Assembly (NCBI GenBank): GCA_000388065.2 | Contig: KB932211.1 | Direction: 5' to 3' (one strand) | Length of the DNA stretch: 19,898 bases | Source of the DNA: Fonticula alba ATCC 38817 | Taxonomy: Eukaryota; Protista; Nucleariida | The notes under the pieces: model-generated | The model's input: only the letters and a program-made list of their open reading frames with translations | What the model was told of the DNA's origin: nothing | The model's database searches: none | Position numbers and translations under genes: made by a program | Part shown: positions 1-19,898 of the stretch, one piece after another | Layout: the number at the start of each line of letters is the position of its first letter | How positions within the stretch are numbered: position 1 is the first letter of the stretch

Positions 1-89
1 TGTGTGCGTGTGTGTGCGTGTGCGTGTGTGCGTGTGTGCGTGTGCGTGTGTGCGTGTGTGCGTGTGCGTGTGTGCGTGTGTGCGTGTGC
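1..89. repeat. Interrupted (TG)n microsatellite built from TGTGTGCG/TGTGCG units, inside an intron
   Basis: Bases 1-89 are an unbroken pyrimidine/purine alternation of TG and CG steps; the 5' end is cut by the window edge. Confidence 0.97.
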
Positions 90-171
90 CCGCATCCACG
101 CATGCCCCGGGGGGGCAAGGTCCCTGGTTGGGCGGACTTCTGACGCCCGCTCCTTTGCCGCGGGGCACCAG
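1..171 (+). other. 3' part of a spliceosomal intron of kinase gene 1
   Basis: Branch-point CTGAC at 140-144 and acceptor CAG at 169-171 (27 nt apart, like the other introns here). The downstream frame begins VLLSF, the residues expected right after the APE motif (gene 2: GPE-VLAAF). Confidence 0.7.
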
Positions 172-593
172 GTGCTGCTGTCCTTCCAGAGCCGCACCGC
201 CATGGCCGGGGATTTGTTCCTGCCTTCGGACATGTTCAGCGCCGGGAACATGCTGTGGGCATGCTTGACCCGGAGTTCCCCGTGGAAGGGTGCGTTGCCT
301 GGGGGCCCTTGTCTTGCGAGGCTTTTTTTTGTGCACCGCCCGGCCCGACTCGCCTAACACCCCCCCCCCCCCCCCGATCACCAGGTCGCACCCTGGCGGA
401 CATTGTACTTCTCGTCCTGGATGGCCAGCGGCCGTCCCTGCGGAAGATCCCCGAGCCGATGGCCGCCGCCGCGGGGGCCCCGCTGTTGGACTTCCTCCAG
501 GCGGCCTGGAGCCCCGAGCCCCAGGACCGGCCCTCGGCCGCGGCCCTGCGCCAGGCGTGCGCCGCGGCGGCGGCCCCCGACCAGCCCGAGTGA
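172..593 (+). CDS. Gene 1 (5'-truncated): last two exons (172-289, 385-593) of a TKL-type protein kinase C-lobe, subdomains IX-XI
   Basis: Spliced translation VLLSFQSRTAMAGDLFLPSDMFSAGNMLWACLTRSSPWK-G-RTLADIVLLVLDGQRP...FLQAAWSPEPQDRPSAAALRQ*. It matches the kinase SDxxSxGxxLW...PW...RP...W...RP pattern and aligns with the gene 2 tail. TGA at 591-593. Confidence 0.85.
290..384 (+). other. Phase-1 intron (95 nt) in gene 1 at the PWxG position
   Basis: Donor GTGCGT at 290, branch CTAAC at 354-358, C16 tract at 360-375, acceptor CAG at 382-384. Splicing restores the frame, and gene 2 has an intron at the same position and phase. Confidence 0.9.
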
Positions 594-654
594 CGGACAC
601 ACGGCAAGCGGGGTGCGGGGGGGGGGGGAGCCCCCTTCCCGGCCTGTGTGAAGC

Positions 655-1909: not shown

Positions 1910-4900
1910 ATGGTGATGGCGAAGCTCGGCAGGCTGGGCGCCGCGCCGTGGCGGCCCTGGCTGCCGCTGTGCGTGGCCCTGGTGCTGTCGGTGCTCGGGG
2001 GCCTGGCGTGGCTGCCGAGCTGGACCCGGGCGGCCATCCTGGCCGACCCGGACGCCGACATGCCGGAGCTCCAGCCCCAGAGGTCGGCCTACGACGTGGG
2101 GTCCATGTACGCCTCGGCCTTCGGGCGCCTGGACCCGGCCGGCCGGCTGGTGAGCTACTCCCTGGAGGGCGGGCGCTACTTCTCGCACCGGGAGGCCACC
2201 CAGCAGGCCCTCCTGGCGGACATGCGGCTGGGGGCCTTCTTCTCGAGTGCCCTCTCCGAGGAGGTCACCTTTGCCGGGTTTTCGCCGGGGGCCGCCCCGG
2301 CGATGGTGGGAGTGGCCGGCCCCGGGGCCGCGCCGCTGTTCGCCTGGCAGGACGGCCAGGCGGTGGGCTTCTCCTCGGCCGAGCAGCGGTACCCGGCGCC
2401 GTACGGCTTCGAGTCGCCGCCGCGACTGCTGGCGGCCTTCGCCACCGGGGCCCAGGCCGGCCAGGTGCTGGTCGGGGCCGGCGGCCTGGCGGCCGTCCTG
2501 ACCCTCGAGGCCGGCAGCTGGGTGGCGAAGGCCGCGTGGCCGGTGGCGGGGACCTCCGGCGCGGCCGGCCTGGCCGGGCACTTCTTCCTGGCCACGCCGA
2601 CCGGGTGGGTGTGGCTGCGGCCGGACCGGTCGGAGCACGCGGTGGGCCTCGGCGCGCCGGTCCTGGACCTGGCGGCCACGCGCTACCTCACGGCCGACCC
2701 GCGGCGCTTTGACCTGGTCGTCGCCACGGCCACCGAGCTGCTGATCTACCTCGGCCTGGGGGATGACGGTGCCTGGCGGGATGTGGTCATCGATCGGCTG
2801 CCGGCCGCGCGGAACAGCCTGTCCCTGTCGCCGGTGCCGCGGGTGCCGCTCATCACGGCCCCCACCGGGTTCCTGCATGTCATCCAGGCCGGGAAGGTCC
2901 TGTGGCGCGCGAATCACCACCCGGCCCGGCCGCTGTGGCAGCGCATGCGCTCCTCCGGCGGCATGGACCTGTCCAAGATGCAGGCGCTGCCGGTCCTGAT
3001 GGATGGCGTGCCCGGGCACCGCCCCGAGCAGTGGGCCCTCGCGGCCTCCGGCCAGGTGTTCCTCCTGGAGGGGCAATTCGGCTGCCATGGGGATGACCCG
3101 TCGATCGTGTGCAAGCCGAGCCCCTCGCTGTGGGCCTGTGCCCCGGGGCGGGCCTTCTCGCCGCTGCTTTCCTCGAGGGAGCTGTGCGCCGGCTGCGCCG
3201 ACGGCTACCATCAAGTCCCCCTGTCGGGGCAGCGGTGTGCGCACTTGCCGGCTGGGCACCTCTTTTCTCCGGGCCTGCCGCATTCTTCTTGCGGGTTATG
3301 TTTAGGGGGGTTGTCTTCTTGGCGGTCTCCTCGGCTCGTCCCTGGTCGATGCTCCACCCGGCGTCCTGCCCACTGACTCACTCCTTGCGTCTTCCTCGCG
3401 GCTTCCTGGCGGTGTCTTCTTGTTTTCCTCGCGGCGTCCTGGTGGCTTCTACATGGCTTCTACATGGCTTCTACATGGCTTCTACATGGCTTCCTCACGG
3501 CTTCTACATGGCTTCTACATGGCTTCTACATGACTTCCTCACCGCTTCCTCGCGGCTTCCTCGCCCCCACCTCGCCCCCACCTCGCCCCCACCCCCCCCC
3601 CACCCCCCGCCCACCGCGGCTCCTCCCCGCCCTCGGACGAAAGACGAGTGTCGTCCCTGCCCCGGGGAACATTGCCGAGCCTGCTTGGCCGGGGTGTGCA
3701 CCGCCTGCAGCGCGGGGTTCCTGCTGCAGCCGGCCGCGGTGGCCGGCGCACCGTCGGCCACCTGCGTGGCCGAGTGCGCCCCGGGGTTCCAGCCCCAGGG
3801 CGAGGCCTGTGTGCCGCTGAGCGTCCCCTCGGTAGCGACGCACTTTGCACAGCTGCCGGCCACGTCCACCGGGCAGACCATCCTCTCGATGGCGCGGACC
3901 CGGGCCTTCCTGAAGGGCGACCGGCTGTATGTGTCGAATGCTTCGCTCTCGGCGCCGGAGCCCGTGAACGTGCTGGTATGGCTGAGTGACAATACCTTCG
4001 GCCTGCTGGACATGCCGGTGCTGATGAGCACCCTGCCGAATGCCGTGCTGTCGGTGAGGCCGATCGTCGGGCTCCTGCCTCCTGTGGCCCCGCAATTCCA
4101 GCACATGGCGGAGCTGGGCCCGGTCAGGCAGCCCGAGCACACGGCTCACCTGGCCCTGGTGGCCATTTCCACCATGGCGTGGGGCTACTCGCGAATGGGT
4201 TGCACACTGCCCGGGCCGGGCCCGACCGACGAGTGCATGCTCGCGTTCCAGCCGGGGGAGGTGCCCCTGCCGAGCTTCACCGCCTTCGGGCCGCTGCATG
4301 TGCTCTCGCCGACGGTCCTGGTCCTGGGCCGGCACTATGTCATGCTCGGGCCGCAGGGGGATGTCGAGGTTGCTGCCGACCCGCACCTCCGGGCCTGGGA
4401 CCGGCCAGCCATGGCGACCCATGTACACCCGGCCACCGGGCAGCCGGCCTCCTGGATCTACCGGTATGACACCCACTCCAGGAGCCTGGTGGCCCAGCCG
4501 TGGGATCTGGTCCGCCTGGGGGACAGTCGGCTGAGGCTGTCTCGGCCGAATATGGCCATCCCCGCCGGCTCGGCGTCCGGCCAGGTGGCCCGGGCCCCGG
4601 TGGGCGGGATCGCGCCGGCTCGCGCCGATGTCGCCGGCAGCAACCCCGGCCACGGCGGTGGCGCCCACCTCGTCATCGAACCGGGCAGCGCCTGGGCGAT
4701 GGTGTCCATGCCGCCGGGGGACACCCGGGCCCGGGTGTCGCCGGGGTCCGAGTATGTCCTGCTGATGGGCCTGCTGAGCCACGGCGACAAGTGGTACTGG
4801 GGCATGGTCGGCCATGCGGGGCTGGAGGCCCAGGGCCGCACCCGGTCCATGAGCGGGACATCGTACCTGCTGGCCGAGCTGCCGGGCCTGTCGGAGCAGG

Positions 4901-7900
4901 GCGGCCTGGCGGCCTTCCACTGGCTGGTCCTACATCTGGAAGGGGTCCCCGACCATACGTCGGCCCTGGTGCTGCTTCACCCGGACTTTGTGGGGATCAT
5001 GCTGCTGCACTGCCCGTCCGGGGAGTTCGCCTGCCGGCCCGGGGCGCGGGGCATTGCCCCGTACCCGGCCTCCCTCGGCCGGCTGGACTACAGCTCGCTC
5101 GGGGTGGTGTCCTTGCCGCGTGGCGGGGCCCTGCCCGCCGGCCGGGATGCATCGGCCGCCTTCCTGCTGGTGTCGCGCCAGGCCCCGGCCACGGGGTTCG
5201 TGGTGCAGGTGGCCCCGGCCGAGTGTCCGGCTCGGACGCATGGCCCGCAGTGCGCGCCCTGCCACCACTCCTGCGAGACGTGCACCGGGCCGCTTGCCGG
5301 GGACTGTGTGCTTCCCGTGTGCCCGGTGTCGGTGGCCTCGCATCCGGGCACCTGCCTGAGTGCCTGCCCGGCCGGGCTACAGATCGACCAGCGGGGGCAC
5401 TGCGCGTGCGACAGCTCGTGCGCGGCCTGCGCCAGCCCGGGCCCGGGGGAGGCCTTCGTGTGCACGGCCTGCCCCGGTGGCATGGCCGTGGAGGTGGCGG
5501 CCGAGGCCCCGGCCACCCGGTGCCTGCCCTGCCACGGGACCTGCCGGGAGTGCTCGGCGCCGGGCCGGGCGGCGGCCTGCACCGCGTGCCGCGACCCGGG
5601 GGCCCTCCTGCGGCCGGATGGCACCTGCGTGGTGGGGCCCTGCCCGGGTGGGACCTGGCCGGATGCCCGGTCGGGCGAGTGCGTCCGCTGCACGGGCGGC
5701 TGCGCGGAATGCGCCGGGCCCGAGCGGTGTACCTCCTGCCGGGCGGGCTTCCTCCATGAGGCCACCATGGGCGTGTGTCTGGCCTGCGCCCCGGAGTGCG
5801 GCTCATGCAGCGCCAGCACCACCGAGTGCGATGCCTGCGGGCCGGGCTACCGCCGGGCGGATGGGCCCCCGCCGGGGGGGACCCCCTCGGCCGGCCGGTG
5901 CGTGGCCTGTCCGGCCGGTTGCGCTCGGTGCGATGACGGGGGCCGGTGCTTGGCGTGCCGGCCGGGCCAGCTGCTGACCCCGTCAGGCACCTGTGTGTCG
6001 ATGTGCCTGGGGGGGCTGGCGCCGAACGCCGACATGACCGCCTGCGAGGCATGCCACCCGGCGTGCGACTGGTGCCAGGCGCCGGGGCTGGCGACCGCCT
6101 GCTTGTCCTGCTCGCCGGGGCTGCACTTGCAGCCCGCCCCCGGGGCCGCGGGGGGGCCGGGATCGTGCGTGGCCGCCTGCCAGGAGGGCTTCTGGTCGTC
6201 GGCCGGCGTGTGCGTCGTCTGTGGCGATGGGTGCCAGGCTTGCGCGGACCGGCAGTCGTGCGACCGGTGCCGCGCGCGGCACTTCCCCGCCGGCGATGGG
6301 ACATGCGGCCTGTGCGATGGGACATGTGCCTCGTGCAGCGAGCCGCTGGCGTGCGACACATGCGCCCCGGGGCGCCATTTCCCGAGCGCCGACCCGCTGG
6401 TCCGGAGCCTGTGCACGGAGGTGTGCCCGGCCGGGGAGTTTTTCGACGCCCAGGACCACCGGTGCCGGGGCTGCGCCGGGACCTGCGCCACGTGCCTCGG
6501 TGTGGCCGACTGCACGGCCTGCGTCTCGGGGCACGGGTGGGCGGCCGGCTCGTCGGTCAAGTGCGCCCTCTGCCCGGCCGGGTGCCGGGCCTGCCTCCGG
6601 GCGGCCGCGTGCGACGAATGCGAGGCCGGGCTCTTCGTGACGCCGGGGGGCGGCTGCGCGGCCGCCTGCCCGGGGGGGACCTTTGCCGATGTGGCGACCG
6701 GCCGGTGCGCCACATGCCAGGCCACCTGCGCCGAGTGCGCGGATGCCTCCTCCTGCACCGTGTGCCAGGGGGGCCTGGTCTTCCTGGAGGCCGGGCCCGG
6801 GGCGCTGTGCACCGGGGCCTGCCCGCCGGGGACCTTTGTCGGGGCCGACCGGTGCATGGCGTGCGACCGGTCGTGCAGCCTGTGCACCGGGCTGGCCGAC
6901 CGGTGCGAGGCCTGCGCGCCGGGCTTCCGCCGGGCCGATGATGCGCCCGGGGCCGGGGCCGGGGCCGGGGCCGGCGAGTGCGTGGCCTGCCCGGGCGGCT
7001 GCACCGGCTGCACCCGGGACATGTGCATCGGCTGCGAGGAGGGGCTCCTCCTGACGCATGGGGGCGCCTGTGTGGCGGCCTGCCCGGAGGGCACCTTCGG
7101 CGAGGCGACCTCGGCCACGTGCCAGCCATGCGCCCTGGAGTGTGGGGCATGTGTCGGCCCGGGCGCCGACCAGTGTACATCCTGCGCGCGGGGGATGGAC
7201 GCCTGGCCGGCGGCCGGCGACCAGCTCTTTGCCTGTGTGCCGTCCTGCCCGGCGGGGGAATATCGCCCGGGCGAGGAGCACACCTGCCTGCCCTGCCATG
7301 AGTCGTGCTCGGCCTGCAACGGCCCGACCGATGGCGACTGCTGGCGATGCCAGGAAGAGGGGCAGGTCCTGCAGGATGGCATGTGCCAGATTGAATGCGC
7401 GCCGGGGTTCACCTCGGTCCATGACCGGTGCGTGCCTTGCCATGCGTCGTGCGGCGCGTGCGCCGGGCCGCGGGTGGACCAGTGCACCGTCTGCCGGGGG
7501 GGGCTGCTGGCCCTGCCGGCCGGTGCGCCGACCGGCCGGTGCGTGAACTCCTGCCCGATGGGCAGCGGGCGCACGGCGGCCGGCTGTGCCGACTGCGCGG
7601 AGCATTGCAGCAGCTGCCCGGGCGGGGCGGGCGCCTGCGCGGTGTGTGCACGCGGGTGGCTCCTGGCCGGGGCCGGCTGCGTGGCCAGCTGCCCGGCGCG
7701 GAGCTTCGACTATGGCGGCAAGTGCGAGGCGTGCCACGGGGACTGTGCCACATGCGGCCGGCATGGGCCGACCGGCTGCACCGCCTGCCCGGGGCCGAGC
7801 CCCTGGCTGCAGGGGGGCCAATGCCTGGCCACCTGCCCGGGGGACACCTTCCCGGAGGGGGGCCAATGTCTGCCCTGTCATCCGGCCTGTGCGGCGTGCG

Positions 7901-10243
7901 CCGGGCCGCAGGCCGCCCAGTGCATGGCCTGCCATGGCGGGGCCTTCCTCTATGGGGGGACCTGCCTGGCGGCCTGCCCGGGGGGCTACTTCGCCGGGGC
8001 CGACCAACGGTGCCAGCCATGCCATGGCCGGTGCCTGACCTGCCACGGGCCCGAGCAAGACCGGTGCCTGTCCTGCCCGGGCCTGGGGCTGCTGCACCGG
8101 GGCCAGTGTGTGGACGCCTGCCCGGCCGGCAGCTTCGCCTGCATGGGATCGTGCGAAATGTGCGACCCGCACTGTGCCCGGTGCACGCCGGTGGCCGCCG
8201 GGCCCGGGGCGGGCGCCTGCGCGTCCTCGTGCGATGCCTGCGAGCCGGGCTTCCTCCGGGCCTTCGCGACCGGCGCGTGTGGGCCGGCCTGCCCGGCCGG
8301 CGAGTACTCGGCCGGTGCGGGCGCCTGCGCGCCGTGCGCCGGGGCCTGTCGCACGTGCGTCGACCGGGCCACCGTCTGTACCTCGTGCCACGACGCGGCG
8401 GCCTGGCTGCGCGTGGACACCGGCGCCTGTGTGGCCAGCTGCCCGGAGGAGGGCCTGGCCCGGGCGGAGCTGGCCTCGGTGCCGGGGCGCGTGTGCCTGC
8501 CCTGTCCCCGGGGGTGCCTTCGGTGCGCCCATGCCGGGGCCGGGGGCTGCGCCATCCTGCCGGCCGGGCCGCTGTCCTGCCCGGTGGTCGAGGCGTGCGC
8601 CTGGTGCGAGGAAGGGCTCCTGCTGAGCGCCGGCGGCCAGTGTGTGGCCGAATGCCCGGAGGCCGGGTACTTCGCCGACTGGGCGGCCGCGCCGCCGGGC
8701 TGCACCGCGTGCCACGCCCAGTGCAAGGCCTGCATCGGGCCCGAGCCCGGGGATTGCCTCGGCCGTGGCTCCCCCGGCCGGCGGCTTGGTATGTGTCTTT
8801 TGGCCGAGGGGGGGGGGAAGGGGGGGCTTCTTGCGCTTTCGCTCCGGCCGCCGGGCGGCGTGTGTGCTGACGGCCATGGCTGCCGGCCACCTTGCTGTGC
8901 AGCGCTCATCCTGGGCATCAGCCTGGGGCTGCTGCTGCTGCTGCTCATGTTGCTGGTCCTGCTGTGGGTGCTGCTGTTTGTGCGCCGGCGGCGGCAGCAT
9001 GCCCTGGACAAGGTGCGCGGCTTCGGCCCCTTTGTGGGCTGCCTCTTGCTCCATGCCGGCGCCCTGGGCTGTCCGGTACAGGGACCGGGGGGGGGGGCGC
9101 GCGTCGGACGTGTGACTGACTGTGGGCATGCTCGGCGCGGTCGGCCCGGCACGCGCGCGCAGGACCCGGCAGCGGGCGCGGACGACGAGCATTCCACCGT
9201 GATGAACACCATCGTGGAGCTGTCGCTCCCGGGGCGCATCCTGGTGAATGTGGCGCAGGACTTTGCCCCGGTCGGGGGGGACCCGCTCGGGGCCGGGACC
9301 CAGGCGTCGGTGTTCGTGGCGCGGGCCGTCAGGGCCGGCATCGGCCGGCGGCTGGGCTGCCCGGACGTGGTGGCCATCAAGCAGATGAAGGCGGCCCAGC
9401 TGCGGCCGGCCCAGTATGCCCTCTTCCAGGGGGAGGTGGCGCTGATGTGGCTGCTGCGCGAGGCGCCGAATGTGGTCCGGCTGTATGGGTACAGCGAGCA
9501 GCCGCCGGCCATCGTGATGGAGTGCTTCGAGACGGATCTCCGGGCGCTGCTGCACTCGGACGTGCCCCTGGCCCAGGGCACCATCTTGGACATCTGCCAG
9601 CAGTGGGCCTCCGGGCTGGAGGCCATGCACCTGGCCGGGGTGGCGCACTGCGACCTGAAGCCGGGCAATGTGTTTGTCAGCCATGCCCCCGGGGCCGGGT
9701 GGCGGGCGGCCCTCGGGGACCTGGGCACCAGCCGGAGCCTGAATGCCGACCGGTCGTCGGCCCTGGTGAACCGGGCCCCGGAGCTGAATGCGCTGACCGC
9801 GCGGTACGCCGGGCCGGAGGTCCTGGCGGCCTTCCGCCAGAAGCGCTCCCTGGACCCGGAGCTCCACCTGATGGCGGATGTCTACAGCGCGGCCATCATG
9901 CTGTGGGAGTGCCTGGCTCGTCGGCTGCCATGGGCCGGTGCGTGTGGGCATGCCTTGCTCCTTTGGCCATGGGCGGGGGGGACGTGCATCGGTTGCCGAA
10001 TTCTGACACGCCTGCGTGTGGGCCCTGTGTCGGGCTGCGTGCGTGCGCGCGGTCTCAGACATGGGCTTCGAGGATATTGCCTCGGCCGTGCTGGGGGGCC
10101 AGCGCCCGGAGATCGCCTTCTCCGGCCCCCTGGCGGACCTGCTGCCGCTGGCGTGGGACACCGAGCCGTTTGCCCGGCCCCCGGTGATGGCCTTCCGGCA
10201 GAAGCTCACCATGGCCTGGATGGCGGCCGCGGCCGCGGAGTAG
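1910..10243 (+). CDS. Gene 2: complete furin-like-repeat, single-pass receptor TKL-type Ser/Thr kinase; exons 1910-3236, 3644-8788, 8903-9012, 9163-9937, 10059-10243 (7542 nt, 2513 aa)
   Basis: ATG at 1910 followed by a hydrophobic signal peptide (WLPLCVALVLSVLGGLAW). 26 CxxCxxxCxxC-type cores counted by eye. TM helix at 8905-8982 followed by RRRR. Kinase motifs LGAGTQASV, VAIK (9370-9381), GEV, HCDLKPGN (9646-9669), DLG (9718-9726), GPE, ADVYS. All four GT-AG introns keep phase and the exon sum is divisible by 3. TAG at 10241-10243. Confidence 0.88.
3237..3643 (+). other. Gene 2 intron 1 (407 nt, phase 1)
   Basis: Donor GTGCGC at 3237, acceptor AAG at 3641-3643; the joint reads GQR-Y-ECRPC. 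Gene 4 has a phase-1 intron at nearly the same position. The exact donor is less certain than for the other introns. Confidence 0.72.
3389..3597. repeat. 11-bp minisatellite (core GGCTTCTACAT), about 19 units, inside intron 1
   Basis: Seven exact GGCTTCTACAT units between 3444 and 3531, with in-register variants (GGCTTCCTCAC, GGCTTCCTCGC, CCCCACCTCGC) within and on both sides. Confidence 0.92.
5221..8760 (+). repeat. Coding array of about 25 furin-like (growth-factor-receptor Cys-rich) repeats in gene 2
   Basis: Recurrent C-x2-C-x3-C-x2-C...C-x2-C...C-x3-C-P-x-G-x-[FYW] units, e.g. CLPCHPACAACAGPQAAQCMACHGGAFLYGGTCLAACPGGYF. Confidence 0.92.
8789..8902 (+). other. Gene 2 intron 2 (114 nt, phase 1)
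   Basis: Donor GTATGT at 8789, branch CTGAC at 8867-8871, acceptor CAG at 8900-8902; immediately precedes the TM exon. Confidence 0.85.
9013..9162 (+). other. Gene 2 intron 3 (150 nt, phase 0)
   Basis: AAG|GTGCGC donor at 9013, branch CTGAC at 9116-9120, first downstream AG at 9161-9162. Confidence 0.85.
9938..10058 (+). other. Gene 2 intron 4 (121 nt, phase 1) at the PWxG position
   Basis: Donor GTGCGT at 9938, branch CTGAC at 10003-10007, acceptor CAG at 10056-10058. Splicing is required to reach the subdomain X-XI frame (DMGFEDIASAVLGGQRP...AWDTEPFARP). Confidence 0.92.
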
Positions 10244-10560
10244 GCTTGGCCCCGCCATCCGCGGGCCCCTCGGCGTGTGGGTGCTGTGCCCTCCCCCGGC
10301 CGGTGACCCTCTGTGTTGTGGGCTCCTGCGCGGCGGCGGGCGGCTCGCCGTCCGGTCGAGGGGCCGTGCGGCGACGCGCTCCGGAGGCGGTGCACCCGGG
10401 CCCTCCTGGCAGGGGCTTCGTCGCCTCTTGTACATCTCCCCCTCTTTTGTTGGTATACACACTGTTCCTCCGCCGACCATTTCGTCCCAGCCGGCGGGCC
10501 GCGCCGCTGTGCTGGCGCTGCCGCCCTGTCGCTGGCCGCGCGGGGGCGTATGGCGCCTCG

Positions 10561-10563
<3 letters not shown>

Positions 10564-10617
<54 letters not shown>
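10564..10617. repeat. G54 homopolymer
   Basis: 54 consecutive G, about 320 nt downstream of the gene 2 stop. The exact length may be affected by sequencing error. Confidence 0.93.
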
Positions 10618-11079
10618 CGGTGCAGCGGGTCACTTCTCTTTTTTTTTTTGACTCTCGCTGTGCCGTCGGGTCAGCCCCATGCGCCCGGTCGTCGGCCCGT
10701 CCGCCAGACACACTGGCACGCCATGCCTCGCTCTGGCGCCCCTGATGCCTGGCACGGGTCCCGGCGTGCTGGGGCTTTTTTTTTCGTGCGGCGAGCGTCC
10801 CTCAGCGCCTGCTCCCCGCCGCCAGGGGGCTCCCACCACCCGTGGCTCCAGGCATGGCACTATGTTGGGTACCCCCCAGCCGGAGCCCACTGCCGGGGCG
10901 CCTTTCCGGGTCCCGGCACTACGGCGCTCGTGCCGGTCGGATGGGCCTCGGGCAATTGGCGGCCGGCTCCGCGCCGACGTCGCGGCCATGCGATGGGTGC
11001 CGCAGCATGTGGGGAGCGGGCCCGACACAGACGTCCCGTCGTAGCATGGCCGGGACGTCTTTCCCCAACCACCATCCAG

Positions 11080-11922
11080 TGGGCTTGCGTGGTGCGGATC
11101 CGGGCCCGGCTGCTTCGGCTCCGACCCGAGCCGCAGGACCCGGTCGACGAAGAGCAGTCCCGGCTTTTTCCCGGCTGACGGTCCCTTTGGGTGGCTTCTC
11201 ATCGGGCGGGCCTGGCGCACCGCCACGGGCGGCCACTCGTGGCAAGGCCGCAGCTCGGGCCCCGGGGCCTCCCAGCGGGGCGAAGGGGCTCCATGCCGCC
11301 GCGACGCCCGGTTCAGGAGGGCGGAAGGCAGCTGGGCCTACCATCTGGGCATGTAACTGGACCATCGGGGCCGCGCATTCCGAGCGTAGGGGGCGAGGGG
11401 ACTGTGGCGTGTCGTGTTGGGCTGGCTCCACGCGACTGAGCCACATCGCCGACCTGGGCGATCTGCCGGCGGGGCCCGGCCTGCCAGGCACACATGCGTC
11501 CTCGCGCGGGCGGGCAAACGCCATGGCCGGCCGGCCTGCCCGGGTGCCCTTTCGCCCGGACCAGTGACCTTGCTGGCAGCTCGGGACCATCCTGGCCAAC
11601 AGACCATCACGTTGCGGGCAGGACGACCAGGGTCCCTGCTGCACCTAATGCAGTGGCTGGGTGATGTATATATATGTGTGGGGGGGGTGGGGGCAGCTGG
11701 CTGTCCATCCACCCCTCCGCGGGTGAATGTAAGACATGCCCGGCATCGGCTCCGGGCACGACGTTCTCACCTTTGTGTGGGCGCCATGGCTGCCGCTGGG
11801 AGGAGGCGCCAGTGCGGCGCATTGATGACATCCCCGCCATTACGGGCCCTCGCCCGGGCGAGCATGAGACGCGAACCTCGGGCCGGTGGTTCCTTCCTTC
11901 CGGCGGAGCGGGGCGTGTCTAG
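11080..11922 (+). pseudogene. Fragment A: highly decayed juxtamembrane and kinase domain of a paralog
   Basis: Colinear motif ghosts across several frames versus gene 2: DPVDEEQS (DPAAGADDEHS), stop at 11176-11178, SLWVASHRAGLAHRHGRPLVA (SVFVARAVRAGIGRRLGCPDVVA), AHSE...IADLG (AHCD...LGDLG), NAM (NAL), LHLM..DVY (LHLMADVY), WEEAPVRRI...GPRP (PWADMGFEDI...GQRP). Confidence 0.62.
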
Positions 11923-11944
11923 GGGCCCTCGGGGGCCTGGGAAC

Positions 11945-12760
11945 CGGCACTGGGGGGGGGTGTGTTCGGGGCAGGCGCCCGCGGCCTTTGTGCTCTGGTG
12001 AAAGCCGCGCTCACATGCCCCTTGGTCAGTGGGCCGTCTGCCGGGCTCTTGTCCCGGCCAGGACCAGCTTCCGGATGGCAACCACCCGGGTGCGGGGATG
12101 CGGCCCGGCGCCTGGCAGGCCCGCCAGAGGCCCCGAGGCGTGGCACAGCGTACGCGTCTTCCTGGCGCTCGAGACGCGCCCCTGCCCCGGCCAGGGAGGG
12201 GGCAAGTGGCGAGACAGCTTCCTGGCGCAGGATGGGCTGCAAGAAGCGCCGGGGCGCCACCCCTGCGACAGGAGCGCGCCATCGAGACGCGATGTGCGGC
12301 CGGGCGCGCGTCGCAGGCCCGATCCGAGGGGGAAAGGATCCATTGCCGCCGACGAGGGAGCAGGAATCGTGAAACACAGGCGCGGCAGTCCCCCTCGCTG
12401 GGCCGAACTCTGGCCAAGAATACAAAGGGGTGACCCGGTGCGCAGCCCCCGGGTTGGGTCCTCCGGCGGCTGCCGCCGTATGGGAGCCCGGCTAACGCTG
12501 CATGCCTCCCGTCCCCCCGGCGCCTGCCCGTGGTGTGTGAGGCCTGGCGTGCTGTCCGCACCGGGGGGCCACTGCTTCCGGCGCCGGCCTGGCTGCCCTC
12601 CTGGGCCTTGCCTGACGGCCGTTGGACCAGCTCGACCCCATGGGCGACAGTGCTCGGTGGGCGCCGGCATGCACGGCTGGCGAACGGGTGCGCTTCAAAC
12701 ATGCGCACCCACCCCACAGCCTTCCAGGCTCGTGTGCTTTGGCAGCTGCCCCGCCGGGCG
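11945..12760 (+). pseudogene. Fragment C: decayed ectodomain piece (end of domain 2 plus furin-like repeat remnants)
   Basis: FGAGARGLCALVKA..SAGLL vs gene 4 FCADGAAGPCVLRPA..DAGLW; VFLALETRPCPG vs gene 4 VFALAMECPG; ACPWCVRPGVLSAPGGHCF (12522-12578) vs gene 2 ACAWCEEGLLLSAGGQCV; LVCFGSCPAG (12729-12758). Confidence 0.5.
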
Positions 12761-13044
12761 TTGTGGAGGCAGGAGCCGGCCAGGCTTCCTTCCCCGGTCG
12801 CCCGGTGCCGTGTGGGAATCACGGCACCGGCTGGGAGGTGAGGCAGATGGCGTATGTGTCCCGGCAGCGGGCGATCCCCCGAGCCCCGGGCAGTGCCAGT
12901 GGCACGCCTCGCCTGGCACATTGGGCAGCTTTCCCCCTTTTCCTGGCCCCCTGTCCCCCTCCCCGCCGCCGGTCCCGCCGCTTGCTGGGACATACACAAA
13001 CAGACAAGCGCGCAGGTGCGCTCTCCTTCGCGGCCAGGGCAGCG

Positions 13045-15617
13045 GCGGCCCCCCGCTCGACGGGTGCTTTTCCCTGGACCCCTGGTCTTGATCTTTCTTA
13101 CACCGGTGCTGCGGTGGGGCGCCCCTTCTCGCCGGGGCAGGATGTCTTTCTGCATGTGGAACAGCTTCGCATCGCGACGCACGCGGGGCCGGCCATCCTC
13201 TCCACCGGACCAGAGTCCCGACCCGTGGCCCGCGCCATTCGGGTGCCCGAGCTCATGGGGAGCTTGGCGCGGGACGGCCTCCAGCGCGCGAGGCCCGGTG
13301 GGGGGCTTCCTCGGGGCCTCTCGGGCGAGCCGTGGGCCCGCTAGGAGACCCCGCTGGCCGGCGCGGAGCCGCCGCTGCACCTTCCCCGGGGCGATCACCA
13401 GGCGCCCTGGGTCGTGGAGCACGGCCGGTCGAGGGCGAGGTTCTTCACGCCGGCCCTTGGGCAGCCGCTGCCCAAGGGCCGGAGACCAGGATCCCGGCCG
13501 GGGTGGGACCGGCACACGCCGGGGTCCCTCGGGTGGGGCAGGCCGGCTTGGCGAACCAGCTGCCCCTGGTCTGCATAGTCCGTCAGGGCCGGTGTCGGCC
13601 GCGCTGCCGGGCGTCGGGGATTCCTTCCACCTGGCCGAGGGCAGGCGACCGTGGCAGGTGGCGCTGGTGGCCGGGTCGCCGGTGGTGTGTGGCCTGTCGC
13701 CGAACCTGCCGGCCGACATCCTGGCCCCATGGCCGGGACGCGGGCAGACTCCCCGGTCGGTGAATGCCCCCTCCGGGGGTGGATGTGGCGCTCCGGCTGG
13801 CCGAAGGCCGGCCGACCGCGGGGCCTCGCCTCGACCCGGGCCCCTCGGGGAGCTGCATGTTGGCGGATGTGCCGGCCGGGGTCGAGGGGTCCGGAGCCCG
13901 GCTCCTGGCGGCCCCGGCTGCAGCCATCCTCCCCGGCCTCCGGCCGGTGCATGCGCTCCTGCCGCCATCGGCGGCCGAGGTGGGCACGCCGCAGCGAGCT
14001 CGGCTGAACGGCGGCCCCGGCGGCGGCGGCTTCGGGACGTGGACTTGGGTGTCCGGTCGCAGGGCGCTGCTCGACCGGAAGACCTTCGGCTGCCCCATGA
14101 CCGGCACCATCCGGTGCATGTCTGCCAAGCCGACCGGCAAGCGGGCCAGCGCCTTGGCCTTGTGTCCCGGGCCATGCCCCCTTCGGCGCATGTGGCGGCC
14201 GGCCGGCTGGGCGTCAAGTGTGAGGGCGGCTGGTGGCCTTCAGCAGCATGGTTGGCCCCGAGTGGATAGTTGCCCGGGCGCCGGGGGGGGACGTGCAGCC
14301 GACTGCCCGGTCCATGGACCACCGGTTTGGCCGCCGGACGCCGGGGACCTCTTCCCCATGCTGCTGGGCCCACCCCCCGCCCGGGCCAGTGAGAGGCCCT
14401 CGTCCCAGGGAGTGGAGCTGCCGTCTGGCGTCCCGGCCCGCCCGGGCGCGCTGCCGATGCGGGCGCGCACTTCCATCGGCGTGTCGGTCTCTGTCGTGCC
14501 ACCTGCCCGGGAGGCGTGCCTGCCATGCCGTCCGGCATGTGCTGTTCCGGGCCGAGCCCGGGCCAGAGCACGATCTGCCCGGTGATGGCTTTTTCCCGGA
14601 GGGGGGTGCCTGTCGCGTGTGCCTGGACGCCGGTGCCGCGTGCACCGATGGCAGTGCCTGTACGCGGTGCAAGGACCAGGCCTTGGTCGGGCCCGAGGGG
14701 ACTCCTTGCGCGTTGGCCTGTTGCTGGTGCTGTTGATTCTGAAGGCGCTTCTCGCTGTGCGCCGGCGCAAGAGGCAGGCCATGGAGAGAGAGTACCTGTC
14801 GACGACGGTGCTGAGCACCATCATCAAGCTGGCCCTGCCCGGGGCCATCCTGGTGGACGTGGCGGGGGACTTCCGACCGCTGGACGAGCAGCTCGGCGCC
14901 GGGACCGAAGCGAGCGTCGACGTCGCGCAGTCGGCCGGGCCCGGGATCGCGGCCCGGTTGGGCTGCCCGGAGGTGGTGGCCATCAAGAAGCTGCGGGCCG
15001 ACAAATATCCAGCCGGGGTGCCACGTCCTCTTCCGGAACACGGTGGTCCCGATATAACTACCTTCGTGGGGCTGAATGCCATGTCGGTGCCGTGTGCCGC
15101 GCCGGAGGTCCTTCCCAGCGGAGTGCCCCCCTGGACCGGGGGGCACCTCTTCCCGGCCGAGGTGTACAGCGCCTCGGTCATCCTCTTCAAGTGTCTGACG
15201 CGCATGGTCCCCTGGCCGGGGAAGAGCATCGCCGAGATCATGGCCGCGGTGTTTGACGGTTCCCGGCCGGTCGCCAACCCTCTGGCGGGCGACGTCACGA
15301 ACCTGGCGCAGGCCGGCTGGCAAAAAGGCCCCGGTCGGCGGCCCCCGGCTGGCGTCCTCCGTCAGCGGGGCGCCGCAATGCACACTGCTGCCGGCGGCCG
15401 GGCCAATCCTGCCCCCCCTCTCACAACCGCACGGTGCATCAACACCAAGCGGGGCGAGGGGGGTGAGGGAACATGGCATTGGGAGATTGGTCTTGTGTCG
15501 GACCGGGCAGCGCGGGAGGGGCTCAAGAAGAAAAGGACCTGCATGGCTCGCGGCCACACACGCACGAGGGCGGACCTGCGGGCGCCGAGCCAAGGCAAAC
15601 ACAACATCACATGGTGA
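13045..15617 (+). pseudogene. Pseudogene B: internally deleted, frameshifted paralog running from signal peptide to kinase (homology ends about 15400; final frame closes at 15617)
   Basis: Colinear matches to gene 4 or gene 2 in shifting frames: GPLVLIFLTPVL (signal), FSPGQDVFLH (LAPEQDMYLH), PGVGDSFHLAEG (PGIGRAFYLANG), WTWVSGRRALLDRKTFGC (WTLLHGQTALFESSSFGC), GPEWIVARAPG (GSDWTVLRVPG), QGVELPSG..IGVS (QGVALPAG..IGVS), about two furin cores, short TM plus RRRKRQ, LGAGTEASV, VAIK, APE, EVYS, PW..RP. No ATG at the signal peptide; in-frame TAG at 13342-13344. Confidence 0.85.
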
Positions 15618-16425
15618 TCACGGGCAGACGCCCTTCCAGGGCAAATAGGAATGGCGCTATTTCCGGTAAAGCCGGCCCTTATTTAATGTCCGATTTGTGA
15701 GATCCCTCCTGCCGTCTGGGCGTCTTGCATGTTCCCGGCAGGCAGGTGCCAGTGCATGGACACTTCAAACTTACCAGATCCACAAACAAAAGGGGGGGCC
15801 CGGGCCGCCGTAGGCGACCCGAGGCAGGGGACTGTGCGTCGGGCTGCGGCCCCTCCATCGATCTGGTCGGGCGCGCAGCTCCGCGAGGGTGGGGCGCGCT
15901 TTTGGCCCCCGGTCGTCCGGCATGCGGCCCTGGCGAGTGCGATGGCGACCGCCCTACCGGCGGCCGGGCGCCGGCCGCGCGCGGTTGCGGCTACGGGACT
16001 CGGGACCGATGCCCGCGACCGCGTCGATTCCCTGGTGTATTCTCAGCTCCGATGGGCGTGCCCGGTCCGCCGCAGCCCGGCAGCCGGCTTGCCCCAGGCC
16101 GGCGGGGATGCCTTCCCAACATGGAGGGGCAGCGGGGGGTCACATCTGTCGCAGACTCCGGCCGATGCCGGGCGCGCCCCATGTGGTGGGGCAGATGGGG
16201 ACGGGGCAGGCGCCGGCCGGGGGGCGCTGGCCCGGGGGAGATGCATCAAGTGCCGCCCCGTGTCCTGGCCCGGGCACATTTGCCACTCCCCCTCATTCTC
16301 TCCCCTTCCTTGTTGCTTTTCCCTCCTTTTTTTCCCTCTACTTCCCTCCTCTTTTCCCTCCTCTCCCCCGCCCCCGCTTCTGGCTCCCGCCTCCGCGGCT
16401 CCCCCCCCCCTTTCCCCCCTTGCAC

Positions 16426-19400
16426 ATGGCCCCTCCACGGGTGGGCCCGCTGGCGGCCCTGCTGGCGGCGGTGCTTTGCCTGCTGCCAGCGGTGTTGGGG
16501 CTGGCGCCGGAGCAGGACATGTACCTGCACGCGGCGCGGGACCCGGTCCTGCTCCTGTCCGATCCGGTGGAGATGGTGTCGCCCTCGGTTCAGTCCTCGA
16601 CGGGCGCCGTGCGGAGGAGCAATACCATCCTCGATTTGCACCTGCAAATGGACCAGGTCCATCAGCTGCCGGAGGTCCGGTGGGGCTCGTTCTTTGGGGA
16701 GTCCTTCATGGAGCTCCACTGTCCGCGGGCGGACAATCCCGGCACCTGGCCGCTGATGATTTTGCCAGTCGGCGAGGCGGCCGCCCCGACGGCAGTCGAG
16801 TACACCCAAAGCACGGTGGCCCTTTTTGGCGAGACCATGGTCTTTGATCTGCCGGCTTCGGACAGCCTCCTGCTGGCCGGAACCGCGTTTTCCACCTCGC
16901 AAGTGGACCTGCTCGGGCTCTATGGGCCGGCCGACGCCCCGCGCGATGCATTCATGGGCACCATCACGCCGGACGGCTTCGGCTGGCAGCTCCTGGAGCT
17001 GGCCCCGGTGTCCGGGGTGGCCATCGGCCAGCCCGGCATCGGGCGGGCATTCTACCTGGCCAACGGCCACCACCTGATGTGCATCATGACTTCGGACTCC
17101 AGGGTCACCGAGACCTCGACCGCCCTGATGCCGGGCGCCATCCTGGCCATGGCGGCCACGCAGCTGGCCGTGCCGGGAGGCAGTTGCCCCGGGCTCCGGG
17201 CCGATGTGCTGGTCCTGCTTGACAGCGGCCAGTTGCAGATCCACCTGTGCCTCGGGCTCGAGGGGCCCGTGGGGGTGGTCTACGGGGCGTTGCCGGCCGG
17301 GGTGTCGGCCGCCGGGGCCTGGTTCCTGACGCCGGCCGCCCCCTCGACCGCCGGGGCTCCGGCGCCCCTGTACCTGGTGCTGCCCTCGGCCGCGGATGCC
17401 CGAGACCGGCTGTGGCTGGCTCACATCCGGGAGGTGGGGCTGGCGTGGCAGCGCGTGGTCCTGCCGCCGGTGGTGACCCGGCTGTCGGACCTGCGGCTGG
17501 CCCGGCTGCGCATGGAGGACCACCGGTCCGGCCGGTGGACGCTGCTGCATGGGCAAACGGCCCTCTTCGAGTCGAGCTCCTTCGGGTGTGACTCCGACCG
17601 GAGCATCACCTGCGACGGTGGCCTGGTGTCCTCCGGCTCAGCGAGCGGGTGGGCCTGTGCCGAGGGTCATGCCGAGGCGCCGTACGTCTCGCCGGGCAAA
17701 CTGTGCGCCGGCTGCATGGATGGGTGGTTCCTGGACCGACCTGCCGGTGCGTATGCCAGGGCCGGGGCGGCGCCGCGCCGGCCCGCCTCCAGGCCCTTCC
17801 CCATGGCCCGGACGTCCGGGCCGCCACTCGCCGCTCGCTGACACATGACACTCCTCCGCCTGTCCCCGTGTCGCGGCAGATGAGGTCCCCCTGTCGGAGC
17901 CGAGCCATGTGTGCCGGCCCTGCGCGTCGGCCCACTGCCGGACATGCGATGCCCGGGACTGCCTCGTATGCGAGGAGACCCACTTCCCGGAGCCGAGCGG
18001 CCCGGCCGGGGCGACCGTCTGCGTGGCCGTCTGCTCGCGGGGCTTTGCCCTGGTGGCCGGGGCGTGCCAGCCTGCTGGCATGCCATTGGCGGTGGCCCGG
18101 CTCACGGTGCCGGAAGCCGACCCGGTCCCCGGGCTGGCGCCTGGGGACAGTGTCACCGCCGCCGGGGAGACCTGGCTGCAGGTGGACCCCGGCACCGGGC
18201 TGCCGGTGGTCCCGGCGGCGGCCGCCGATGCGGGCCCGGCCGCGGGGATGCTCCTTTTCACCGAGCAGCAAAAGGTCCTTTTCCTGCCGGCCAGCGCTGT
18301 CGGCCAGGCTGGCGGGGCCCCGCCGGCCCGGGAGGTTGTCCTGCTGGATGTGAACCTGCCAGGGCCGGTGGTGGCTTTCGCCGAGACCCGGTCCTTCTCC
18401 GAGGACAATCAGCTGCTCCTGATGCTGGCCCTGTGCTTGCGGCCCGGGACGACGTTTGTGGTGATCCTCGCGTGTCCCGCCGGGCCCGGGGGGACGGCTT
18501 GCGTGATTGCGCGGCCGGCGTCTGCCAGCCTCCTGTCGGCGGATGGCTGCCTGGCCGTGCGGCGCGTCGACTCCGGCAGCCTATTTGTGCAGAAGACCCG
18601 GACCTGGGGGCTGCTGCTTCGGCCGGATGTCACCCAGCAGAGGGTCTCGGCGGCGGTGCTCGAGGGCCACGGGCTGGTGGGCTTGCCGGTCCGATCCGGG
18701 GATCGAGCTCGGCTGGACCCGGGCCCGGGCGAGTGGTTCCTCTCGGTCAATTCGCTGGGGCTGCCGGGTGCGGCGCCGCAGTTTCTCCCCTGGTCGTGGG
18801 ATTCCCGGCTGCTGTCGCTCAGTGGGCGGCTGCTTCGGCGGCAGGCGGCGGCGGCCCTGGCGGTGGACGGCCCGTGTGTGCCGGTGTTTCTGCCCCGCGG
18901 CCCGGGGGGGGCCCCGCCGGAGCTGGTCTTCCCCCTGGGTGCCGGGTCCGACTGGACGGTTCTCCGGGTGCCCGGGGACATGCTGCCGTCCGGCCGGTCG
19001 GTCGACTTGCCCTTCAGCTGGCATGTGCTCGGGGCCCTGCCCCGGGAACTGCCGCCCAGCCGGGGGTCGTCCTCGGACGTCCTCTTTCAGGGGGTGGCCC
19101 TGCCGGCCGGGGGGGCCCGGTTCCCGAGTGCGCTGGTGTTGCTGGCGCGCCACTTCATCGGCGTGTCGCTGCTATTTTGCGCGGACGGCGCGGCCGGGCC
19201 GTGTGTCCTCCGGCCGGCGGTCTTTGTGGACCTGCCGGCCGGGATGCACTCCACGGCCGATGCCGGGCTCTGGACGCTGGCGGTGGCAGGGGGCCCGGGC
19301 CCGGGCCCGGGGCCGGTCGGGACGTTGCAGTCACCCGGCGAGGTGACCCTGGTGGCCTTTGCGCCGGATGTCGGCATGCTGGTCTTCGCCCTGGCGATGG

Positions 19401-19898
19401 AGTGCCCCGGCGGGGGGGATGCGCCGCTGTGCGCCCCCTGCCATGAGGCGTGTGCCACGTGCGACGCCCCGGGCCCGGACGGGTGCATGTCCTGTCGCCA
19501 CTGGGCGTGGACTTCGCCGGGCGAGTGTCTGGCTGCCTGCCCGGGTGGCTTGTTCGCGGAGCCCGACGGCCGGTGTGTTTGCCATCCCACGTGCGCCCAG
19601 TGCGCCCAGGCGGGTGCCAGCGGCTACACCTGCACCCGGTGCGTCGGTGGGCATGCTGTCGACCCGCATGCCGGCTCGCCGGGCCGGTGCTTCGAGTGCG
19701 CGGCCTCCTGCGGGGAGTGCTCGCGGCCTGGCGACCCGGCGGCCTGCACGGCGTGCCTGACCGGTGATTGGCTGCTTGATGGCACATGTGTCGGCGTCTG
19801 TCCGCCCGGGACCTGGTCCGACGGGGCGGGCCAAGTGTGTCAGGCCTGCCTGGCCGGCTGCACCGACTGCACCACGGCCACCGCCTGCACGGGCTGCA
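16426..19898 (+). CDS. Gene 4 (3'-truncated): paralogous receptor ectodomain; exons 16426-17746 and 17880 to beyond 19898
   Basis: ATG at 16426 with a signal peptide (GPLAALLAAVLCLLPAVLG). After the intron the frame (not in the supplied ORF track) stays open to the window end. Domain order matches gene 2, and the furin repeats are colinear with gene 2 repeat by repeat (CAPCHEAC/CAPCHHSC, GRCVCHPTC/GHCACDSSC, CPPGTWSD/CPGGTWPD). TM and kinase are presumed to lie beyond the window. Confidence 0.88.
17747..17879 (+). other. Gene 4 intron 1 (133 nt, phase 1)
   Basis: Donor GTGCGT at 17747, branch CTGAC at 17838-17842, acceptor CAG at 17877-17879; the joint reads DRPA-D-EVPLSEPSHVCRPC. Confidence 0.9.

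What the first reader, a model, noticed from the sequence alone, without database searches (positions are those of the whole stretch)
1..19898. Tandem birth-and-death array of large furin-repeat receptor kinases: candidate variable recognition locus
Seen: every recognisable coding piece in 20 kb belongs to one family on one strand: three apparently intact members (genes 1, 2, 4) and three decayed pieces (A, C, B). The ectodomains of genes 2 and 4 share domain order and a colinear Cys stalk, while their Cys-poor domains share only short motif islands. Known: clustered, fast-diverging receptors interspersed with pseudogenes typify recognition loci (plant RLK/NLR clusters; the linked polymorphic tgrB1/tgrC1 allorecognition genes of Dictyostelium are a functional analogy). 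Inference: a self/non-self, prey or pathogen sensing receptor repertoire, which would be notable if the host is the aggregative holomycotan Fonticula.
Basis: partly seen in the sequence, partly recalled or inferred. Interest (0 to 1): 0.82.

Follow-up and report, generated by a model that had tools for sequence, protein, structure and literature searches.

The report
Giant receptor-kinase gene array in Fonticula
This stretch of the slime-mould-like amoeba Fonticula alba holds part of a row of genes for huge surface receptors found only in this species, whose outer tips differ greatly between copies; what they sense, and any role in telling self from non-self, is untested.

Summary
The window is one contig of Fonticula alba scaffold KB932211.1, with assembly gaps on both sides. 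Every recognisable coding piece is on the + strand and belongs to one family.

- **Intact genes:** only gene 2 (1910-10243, 2513 aa) is complete. It is transcribed and spliced.
- **Gene 4:** an open head of 1113 codons, with RNA support, cut by a gap.
- **Gene 1:** only a ~110-codon kinase tail next to a microsatellite and a gap.
- **Relic:** one "telescoped" copy (13366-15395) has lost its catalytic core and shows no RNA of its own.

The architecture is signal peptide, beta-propeller, furin-like module, second beta-propeller, ~24 furin-like repeats, transmembrane helix, then a TKL-like Ser/Thr kinase.

A profile of the second propeller found 60 proteins among 1.84 billion. All 30 I checked are from Fonticula.

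Kinase domains are 44-82% identical to gene 2's. The propeller heads are ~20% identical between most copies. No recent duplicates were seen.

In another array of the family, neighbours have 83-90% identical kinases but heads only ~20% identical.

The best reading is a diversified ligand-sensing receptor repertoire, closest in kind to the Entamoeba transmembrane kinases. Allorecognition is untested. Earlier notes of this scan recorded family members on other DNA of this genome.

The parts
1..89 (.). (TGTGTGCG)n microsatellite at the contig start. At least 8091 N precede it in the scaffold.
157..572 (+). 'Gene 1': only a kinase C-lobe tail. It covers family profile positions 258-302 at 157-294 and 301-359 at 384-572, split by an intron-like 89-nt gap at the same profile position as gene 2's last intron. 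The APE motif is changed. A 98-aa gene is annotated here. Whether the full gene is intact cannot be judged.
1910..10243 (+). Gene 2: a complete receptor kinase (P0001, 2513 aa, named 'TKL protein kinase' in NCBI). Exons are about 1910-3236, 3634-8788, 8902-9012, 9163-9936 and 10058-10243.
   Evidence: last intron confirmed by RNA contigs
2042..3085 (+). Gene 2 domain D1: Cys-poor head with no Pfam family. It is predicted with confidence as an all-beta, 7-blade-propeller-like fold.
3068..3822 (+). Gene 2 CR1: a short furin-like Cys-rich module split by intron 1 (3237-3633). That intron holds an 11/22-nt tandem repeat.
3805..5226 (+). Gene 2 domain D2: a second Cys-poor propeller-like head with no Pfam family. 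The profile built from this domain was found only in Fonticula.
5227..8788 (+). Gene 2 stalk: 1185 aa, 16% Cys, with about 24 CxxCxxxCxxC units at a period of ~48 aa. It passes the Pfam gathering scores of GF_recep_IV, VSP, Furin-like and Furin-like_2.
8902..8982 (+). Gene 2 transmembrane helix.
9163..10243 (+). Gene 2 kinase domain, with VAIK, HCDLKPGN, DLG and GPE motifs. A 121-nt GT..AG intron at 9937-10057 is spliced out in RNA contigs of four runs. The transcript extends to at least 10471.
10560..10617 (.). A run of 58 G in gene 2's 3' flank. RNA contigs stop before it.
10472..13365 (.). About 2.9 kb with no recognisable family piece, no Pfam match and no real RNA coverage: only trace depth (about 1-2) from contigs that match a few dozen bases near 11.5 and 13.0 kb and then run on unlike the window.
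13366..15395 (+). Telescoped relic of a gene-4-type paralogue. In order it keeps D1 scraps (13366-13479, 13797-14093), a weak stalk repeat (14470-14721), the TM helix plus kinase N-lobe (14706-15008, profile 15-122) and the C-lobe (15057-15395, profile 245-363). The catalytic core (profile 123-244) is deleted in frame. A 357-aa gene is annotated at about 13857-15669. Only 30-50-nt RNA matches occur, all belonging to paralogues' contigs.
16426..19898 (+). Gene 4 head (P0057, H696_05542), open for 1113 codons. Exon 1 is 16426-17746 and carries the signal peptide, D1 (16498-17589) and the first half of CR1. The intron is 17747-17879. Exon 2 starts at 17880 and carries the rest of CR1, D2 (18059-19405) and the first stalk repeats. 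It runs into a 1345-N gap. RNA contigs hold 37-51% of its sampled words.

Best explanation
The window is part of a same-strand array of a Fonticula-restricted family of at least 60 very large type-I receptor kinases.

Each full member has, in order:
- a signal peptide;
- a beta-propeller head (D1);
- a short furin-like Cys-rich module;
- a second, unrelated beta-propeller (D2);
- a rod of about 24 furin-like repeats;
- one transmembrane helix;
- a TKL-like Ser/Thr kinase with intact catalytic motifs.

Shown here: the architecture, the restriction to Fonticula, expression and splicing of gene 2, RNA support for gene 4, the decay of two copies, and far greater divergence of the heads than of the kinases.

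Inferred: the propeller heads bind extracellular ligands, the Cys-rich rod holds them away from the membrane, and ligand-driven clustering switches on a common kinase output. On this view the family is a repertoire of many ligand specificities feeding one signalling module. It grew by tandem duplication, head divergence and occasional decay.

The likeliest ligands for a bacterivorous, aggregating amoeba are cues from prey, the environment or other cell surfaces. This is the kind of role documented for the Entamoeba transmembrane kinases.
For: - **Identity and context:**
- **Architecture:** Pfam kinase and furin-like/GF_recep_IV/VSP hits above their cut-offs. Domain boundaries are consistent in 37 members. 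AF2 models of D1 and D2 have pLDDT 88 and 85 and match only generic propellers.
- **Kinase:** the catalytic motifs are kept in 36-42 of 45 members. The nearest solved kinases are RAF and TAK1.
- **Restriction to Fonticula:** the D2 profile gave 60 hits among 1.84 billion representatives, all with E at or below 8e-17 and none weaker. All 30 hits checked are Fonticula.
- **Divergence:**
- **Expression:** the intron at 9937-10057 is spliced in four runs while 10.5-14.8 kb is silent apart from trace paralogue matches. Gene 4 is 37-51% covered.
- **Decay:**
- **Analogue:** EhTMKs have a signal peptide, a CXXC-rich ectodomain, a TM helix, a TKL-like kinase and many truncated copies, with roles in phagocytosis and serum response (PMC2880585, PMC2211552).
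Against: - No ligand, binding or phosphorylation data exist for any member.
- RNA evidence comes from small 2012 runs kept as contigs. It shows presence only and gives no information on conditions.
- A higher rate of change in ectodomains than in kinases is usual for receptor kinases and does not by itself show diversifying selection.
- Synonymous sites in the heads are saturated, so dN/dS is uninformative.
- The locus is broken by gaps and holds a 1109-nt block that is 100% duplicated beside two gaps. Gene counts and 'intact' calls are therefore uncertain.
Confidence: 0.65

Rival explanations
1. Allorecognition or kin-discrimination locus. On this view the receptors are highly polymorphic between strains and decide who may join an aggregate, like tgrB1/tgrC1 in Dictyostelium.
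For: - Fonticula aggregates.
- The family is clustered, species-restricted and head-variable.
- Pseudogene relics are interspersed among the genes.
Against: - No second isolate could be examined, so polymorphism is untested.
- Sixty or more deeply diverged paralogues fit many different ligands better than one matching pair.
- No paired ligand/receptor gene organisation was seen.
- tgr proteins have no kinase (my own knowledge).
Confidence: 0.07
2. Developmental cell-cell signalling receptors. On this view they are used during collective invasion or sorocarp formation rather than for sensing prey or the environment.
For: - Receptor kinases with furin-like ectodomains serve cell-cell signalling in animals (general knowledge).
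- Genes 2 and 4 are expressed.
Against: - The stage of the RNA samples is unknown.
- A family this large and this diverged is not needed for a simple developmental programme.
Confidence: 0.15
3. Mainly a variant surface coat or adhesion family. On this view the Cys-rich rods and heads serve adhesion or surface variation, as in Giardia VSPs, and kinase signalling is secondary.
For: - The Pfam VSP model is matched above its cut-off.
- Many D2-bearing models of 800-1700 aa have no annotated kinase.
Against: - The kinase is the best conserved part and keeps its catalytic motifs.
- Many kinase-less models are marked partial or sit on tiny scaffolds or next to gaps.
Confidence: 0.08

Closest known systems
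Entamoeba histolytica transmembrane kinases (EhTMK families A-F)
   Same: A large lineage-specific family in an amoeba. The layout is signal peptide, CXXC/VSP-like Cys-rich ectodomain, one TM helix and a cytosolic TKL-like kinase. Many copies are truncated at the 5' or 3' end; only 6 of the 35 B1 members are full length. Documented roles are in phagocytosis and serum or growth response (PMC2880585, PMC2211552).
   Different: No Entamoeba protein appeared among the kinase-region hits, so there is no sign of orthology; a direct comparison was not made. EhTMK ectodomains are about 900 aa and no propeller heads are described for them. The Fonticula proteins are about twice as long, with two novel propellers and ~24 furin-like repeats.
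Animal EGFR/ErbB and insulin-receptor families
   Same: The order is globular domain, furin-like Cys-rich region, globular domain, Cys-rich region, TM helix, kinase. Pfam GF_recep_IV and Furin-like are matched above their cut-offs.
   Different: The globular domains are predicted beta-propellers with no Recep_L_domain match. The catalytic loop is HCDLKPGN, of Ser/Thr type, not the tyrosine-kinase form. The stalk is several times longer.
MET/RON and plexin-type receptors (Sema propeller plus PSI Cys-rich module)
   Same: A 7-blade propeller head followed by Cys-rich modules on a single-pass receptor, with a kinase in MET/RON.
   Different: There is no Sema or PSI Pfam match. Structure hits are generic propellers (DDB1, EED, Nup133) at TM 0.4-0.5. 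A Sema entry appears only at TM 0.33.
Plant RLK/Pelle and NLR gene clusters
   Same: Tandem same-strand arrays with interspersed fragments. The sensing domains are variable and the TKL-related kinase is conserved.
   Different: The ectodomains are unrelated. No recent duplicates occur in this window, and no evidence ties the family to immunity.
Dictyostelium tgrB1/tgrC1
   Same: Surface proteins of an aggregative amoeba.
   Different: No shared domains were found here, the tgr proteins have no kinase, and the defining polymorphism was not testable.

Membership tests
Eukaryotic protein kinase superfamily (active kinase) | Pkinase domain with the beta3 Lys, an HxD...N catalytic loop, a DFG-type motif and an APE-type motif. 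| tested here: met
   Gene 2 scores Pkinase 91.6 bits against a cut-off of 31.7. It has VAIK, HCDLKPGN, DLG and GPE. The motifs are kept in 36-42 of 45 paralogues. Enzyme activity was not assayed.
TKL group of kinases | Closest similarity to TKL kinases (RAF, MLK/TAK1, IRAK and others). | tested here: inconclusive
   The best solved relatives are B-RAF, C-RAF and TAK1, but only at E ~1e-11. The best non-Fonticula database hits are bacterial Ser/Thr kinases at ~30% identity. NCBI's automatic name is 'TKL protein kinase'.
Receptor tyrosine kinases | Tyrosine-kinase catalytic loop (HRDLAARN or HRDLRAAN type). | tested here: not met
   The loop is HCDLKPGN or HRDLKPxN across the family.
Furin-like / growth-factor-receptor Cys-rich repeats | Pfam Furin-like, Furin-like_2 or GF_recep_IV above the gathering score. 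| tested here: met
   GF_recep_IV scores 62.7 against 29.5, Furin-like_2 28.6 against 28, Furin-like 27.3 against 26.8, and VSP 44 against 31.4.
EGFR / insulin-receptor family | Receptor L domains flanking the furin-like region. | tested here: not met
   D1 and D2 have no Pfam match. AF2 predicts all-beta propeller-like folds.
Beta-propeller fold (for D1 and D2) | About 7 four-stranded blades and structural matches to known propellers. | tested here: met
   pLDDT is 88 and 85, and pTM is 0.90 and 0.86. The models have 28-32 strands. Matches are to DDB1 BPB, EED and Nup133, with TM 0.5 for D1 and 0.35-0.42 for D2. These are predictions only, and no specific propeller family could be assigned. 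D1 and D2 show no mutual sequence similarity.
Birth-and-death multigene array | Tandem same-strand paralogues with interspersed pseudogene relics. | tested here: met
   In and just beyond the window: gene 2, the telescoped relic, gene 4, then downstream a stalk-TM-kinase gene and a further D1. Other arrays show the same pattern.
Birth-and-death multigene array | Recent duplicates (ongoing birth). | tested here: not met
   The closest long pairs are ~62% identical. Genes 2 and 4 belong to different old subfamilies. The only 100% duplicate is a 1109-nt block beside two gaps, possibly an assembly artefact.
Allorecognition locus (tgr-like) | High allelic polymorphism between isolates and matched ligand/receptor pairs. 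| not testable with these tools

The most novel reading that the evidence does not exclude
The arrays are a true recognition repertoire. In this reading, novel propeller heads are kept hypervariable, by diversifying selection or head swapping, while gene conversion keeps the kinase module near-constant within an array. That would be an innate-immunity-like or self/prey discrimination system in the aggregative sister lineage of fungi.

The strongest hint comes from the KB932210.1 array. Neighbouring genes there have kinases 83-90% identical but heads only 18-26% identical, and the identity profile along the genes is mosaic.
Probability: 0.2. Interest if true: 0.8.

Novelty: new variant of a known kind. 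Interest (0 to 1): 0.55.

Why it matters
Fungi are generally regarded as lacking receptor kinases (my own knowledge). Their amoeboid sister lineage turns out to carry at least 60 giant ones, an estimated ~1% of its genes. That estimate assumes the ~6,300 locus tags roughly equal the gene count, which I did not verify.

These receptors are built from two propeller domains seen nowhere else, set on an EGFR-like Cys-rich rod. No paper in the searched library describes the family.

It is a ready-made system for asking how an aggregative bacterivore senses prey, neighbours or surfaces. It also offers a case study of how sensing modules diversify while the signalling module stays constant.

Tried and rejected
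- **Domain shuffling in gene 2.** In the kinase tree, gene 2's kinase sits outside the clade of its head-type relatives. An AU test does not reject monophyly (p = 0.28), so I make no such claim for the window.
- **D1 and D2 as an internal duplication, like EGFR L1/L2.** hhalign gives probability 2%.
- **Decayed family pieces in 10.5-13.3 kb.** Low-identity tblastn hits appeared on both strands only with composition correction switched off. Profile and phmmer searches found nothing, so I treat those hits as compositional noise.
- **The telescoped copy as a retrocopy because it lacks the last kinase intron.** Rejected: gene-4-type kinases (P0033 and the downstream gene) also lack that intron.
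- **Per-domain dN/dS.** Head synonymous sites are saturated and GC3 is 0.89-0.97, so the measure is uninformative for selection.
- **Expression of the telescoped gene.** The only matches are 30-50-nt stretches of contigs that run on unlike the window, so they come from paralogues.
- **Literature on the family.** Four searches found nothing.


Full report
**Where the window is**

The kinase part of the long ORF matches a 2513-aa NCBI protein of Fonticula alba at 100% identity (P0001, 'TKL protein kinase'). That protein is encoded on scaffold KB932211.1 of GCA_000388065.2. By position, the window corresponds to about 587,634-607,531 of that record.

The window is one contig. At least 8091 N precede it and 1345 N follow it. 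It is very GC-rich, 68-78%, which fills all six frames with long spurious ORFs.

**What is in it**

I built family profiles for D1, CR1, D2 and TM-kinase and searched all six frames. I also ran phmmer with 45 paralogues. Every hit is on the + strand.

- *Positions 157-294 and 384-572.* These hold only the last ~110 codons of a kinase (profile positions 258-359). They are split at the same profile position as gene 2's last intron. The conserved APE motif is altered, and the piece is 40-55% identical to all paralogues. Immediately upstream lie a (TGTGTGCG)n repeat and the assembly gap. The annotation calls a 98-aa gene here. 'Gene 1' therefore cannot be called intact.
- *Gene 2 (1910-10243).* It is complete, with five exons.
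- *Positions 10472-13365.* I found no family piece, no Pfam match and no real RNA coverage, only trace paralogue matches.
- *Positions 13366-15395.* This is a 'telescoped' copy. In order it keeps scraps of D1, one weak stalk repeat, the TM helix with the kinase N-lobe (profile 15-122) and the C-lobe (profile 245-363). The catalytic core is deleted in frame. Its nearest relatives are gene-4-type members, but at lower identity than working members show.
- *Gene 4 (16426 to the end).* It is an open 1113-codon head with a GT..AG intron at 17747-17879. It equals the 1152-aa model H696_05542.

There are no tRNA or Rfam hits.

**Expression**

Four small RNA-library runs from 2012, representing two samples and kept as contigs, were laid on 9700-15699.

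- One 426-465-nt contig per run joins 9886-9936 to 10058-10471. It skips a 121-nt GT..AG intron, as in the annotation.
- 10.5-14.8 kb has no real cover (only trace depth from three short paralogue matches). This also argues against DNA contamination.
- The only matches in the telescoped copy are 30-50-nt pieces of contigs that run on unlike the window, so they come from paralogues.
- The same runs hold 37-51% of the sampled words of gene 4's head.

Genes 2 and 4 are therefore transcribed. The relic shows no transcription of its own. Contigs show presence, not absence.

**Architecture**

- *Kinase.* Pfam confirms it (91.6 bits).
- *Stalk.* It passes the cut-offs of GF_recep_IV, VSP, Furin-like and Furin-like_2. 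It is 1185 aa long with 16% Cys and about 24 units of ~48 aa.
- *D1 and D2.* Neither has a Pfam family.
- *Predicted structures.* Using alignments of 35-36 paralogues, AlphaFold2 gives confident all-beta models (pLDDT 88 and 85, pTM 0.90 and 0.86).
- *Fold matches.* Foldseek against the PDB finds only generic 7-blade propellers: DDB1 BPB, EED and Nup133, at TM 0.35-0.5. In AlphaFold DB the only good matches (TM 0.6-0.8) have A0A058... accessions, which are Fonticula proteins (accessions tied to Fonticula). The ESM Atlas gives generic propellers.
- *D1 against D2.* They show no mutual sequence similarity.
- *Catalytic motifs.* They are intact in gene 2 and in most paralogues.
- *Kinase type.* The catalytic loop is of Ser/Thr type. 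The nearest solved kinases are RAF and TAK1, at E ~1e-11.

**The family**

- The kinase region finds 45 Fonticula proteins at E below 1e-48. The next hits are bacterial kinases at ~30% identity.
- An exhaustive HMMER search with the D2 profile over 1.84 billion representatives gives exactly 60 hits. All have E at or below 8e-17 and none is weaker.
- All 30 hits that I looked up, including the weakest, are Fonticula alba.
- Locus tags and scaffolds show many clusters: H696_0538x-05418, 03229-03238, 05292-05303, 0619x, and this one around 0554x.
- Members also sit on tiny unplaced scaffolds. This suggests the family is hard to assemble.
- The 37 full-length members share the same domain boundaries.

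**Divergence**

Identity of gene 2 to its paralogues, by region:

| Region | Identity to gene 2 |
|---|---|
| Kinase | 44-82% |
| Stalk | 28-57% |
| CR1 | 30-63% |
| D1 and D2 | found by BLASTP in only about 7 members, at ~30% |

- Gene 4's head type is shared with a different set of about 10 members.
- Gene 2 against gene 4 is 20% identical in D1 and 17% in D2.
- Over 435 pairs, median identity is 19% for D1, 34% for CR1, 22% for D2 and 58% for the kinase. No pair has a head as similar as its kinase.
- In the kinase tree, gene-4-type genes form a 100/100 clade. Six of the seven gene-2-type genes form a 96/95 clade. Gene 2 and P0002 sit outside it, but an AU test does not reject joining them to it (p = 0.28).
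- The neighbours in the window are therefore old members of different subfamilies.
- No recent duplicates exist. The best long pairs are ~62% identical.

**Downstream of the window**

After the gap lies a 1109-nt block that is 100% identical to a block 5 kb further on, which ends at the next gap. This is either an assembly artefact or a very recent duplication.

Next comes a 1024-aa stalk-TM-kinase gene of gene-4 type. It is 84% identical to P0025 in the TM-kinase part and 59% identical to gene 2. It may be the missing 3' half of gene 4.

A further D1 starts about 11 kb past the window. This agrees with earlier notes of this scan.

**A family-level pattern outside the window**

On KB932210.1, at 533-585 kb, at least eight members and relics lie head to tail.

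- *Identity.* Neighbouring kinases there are 83-90% identical, yet the heads are 18-26% identical, which is the family background. In the gene-4-type clade, kinases at 62-68% go with heads at 35-42%.
- *Mosaic profile.* Identity along the genes runs: head ~25%, mid-stalk 60-75%, distal stalk 40-50%, kinase ~90%.
- *Synonymous divergence.* Kinase dS is 0.23-0.36, against 0.45-0.54 in deep pairs. Head dS is saturated. The caveats are extreme GC3 and poor head alignment.
- *Interpretation.* This fits gene conversion or recombination homogenising the 3' half, head swapping, or very strong diversifying selection on the heads.

**Interpretation**

The shown facts fit a diversified repertoire of ligand-sensing receptor kinases. 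The mechanism is inferred from how receptor kinases work in general: propeller heads bind ligands, the Cys-rich rod acts as a spacer, and clustering activates the kinase.

The closest known system in kind is the Entamoeba transmembrane kinase family. It has a CXXC-rich ectodomain, a TM helix and a TKL-like kinase, many truncated copies, and roles in phagocytosis and serum response (PMC2880585, PMC2211552). There is no sign of orthology.

The domain order resembles EGFR and the insulin receptor. However, the L-domain and tyrosine-kinase features are not met.

Allorecognition would need polymorphism data, which could not be obtained.

**Novelty**

The genes carry automatic names in GenBank. Four full-text searches found no paper describing the family. 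I rate it a new variant of a known kind, namely a lineage-specific receptor-kinase expansion with novel heads.

The same scan had already noted family members on other pieces of this genome and on this window.

Noticed in passing
L005 and L006 (KB932210.1, 533-585 kb): A dense same-strand array of the same family. Neighbouring kinases are 83-90% identical but propeller heads only 18-26%, and the identity profile is mosaic: head ~25%, mid-stalk 60-75%, distal stalk 40-50%, kinase ~90%. This suggests gene conversion of the 3' half, or head swapping.
   Followed up: partly
L004:14819-15927 and L004:20034-21142 (just downstream of the window): A 1109-nt block (kinase 3' end plus flank) is present twice at 100% identity, each copy abutting an N gap. 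It is either an assembly artefact or a very recent duplication. It makes the 1152-aa model of gene 4 end with the downstream gene's C-terminus.
   Followed up: partly
window 10560-10617: A run of 58 G in the 3' flank of gene 2. RNA contigs end before it.
   Followed up: no
window 3443-3615: Intron 1 of gene 2 holds tandem repeats: an 11/22-nt GGCTTCTACAT-type unit, then CCTCGCCCCCA units.
   Followed up: no
window 1-89: A (TGTGTGCG)n microsatellite sits exactly where the catalytic part of the gene-1 kinase should be, next to the scaffold gap.
   Followed up: partly
window, L002, L003, L004: Intron positions in the kinase region differ between paralogues. Gene 2 has introns at profile positions ~42 and ~301. 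P0029 has them at ~60 and ~139. P0033 and the downstream gene-4-type gene have none. The intron inside CR1 is shared by all four loci examined (gene 2, gene 4, P0033, P0029).
   Followed up: partly
L003:20571-27233: The gene next to P0029 is a model of at least 1833 aa with faint FG-GAP_3 and Furin-like_2 hits and no kinase on record. It may be a related Cys-rich propeller surface protein.
   Followed up: no
family-wide: Several members lie alone on tiny unplaced scaffolds of 3.5-13 kb. This suggests the family is a main cause of assembly breaks in this genome.
   Followed up: no
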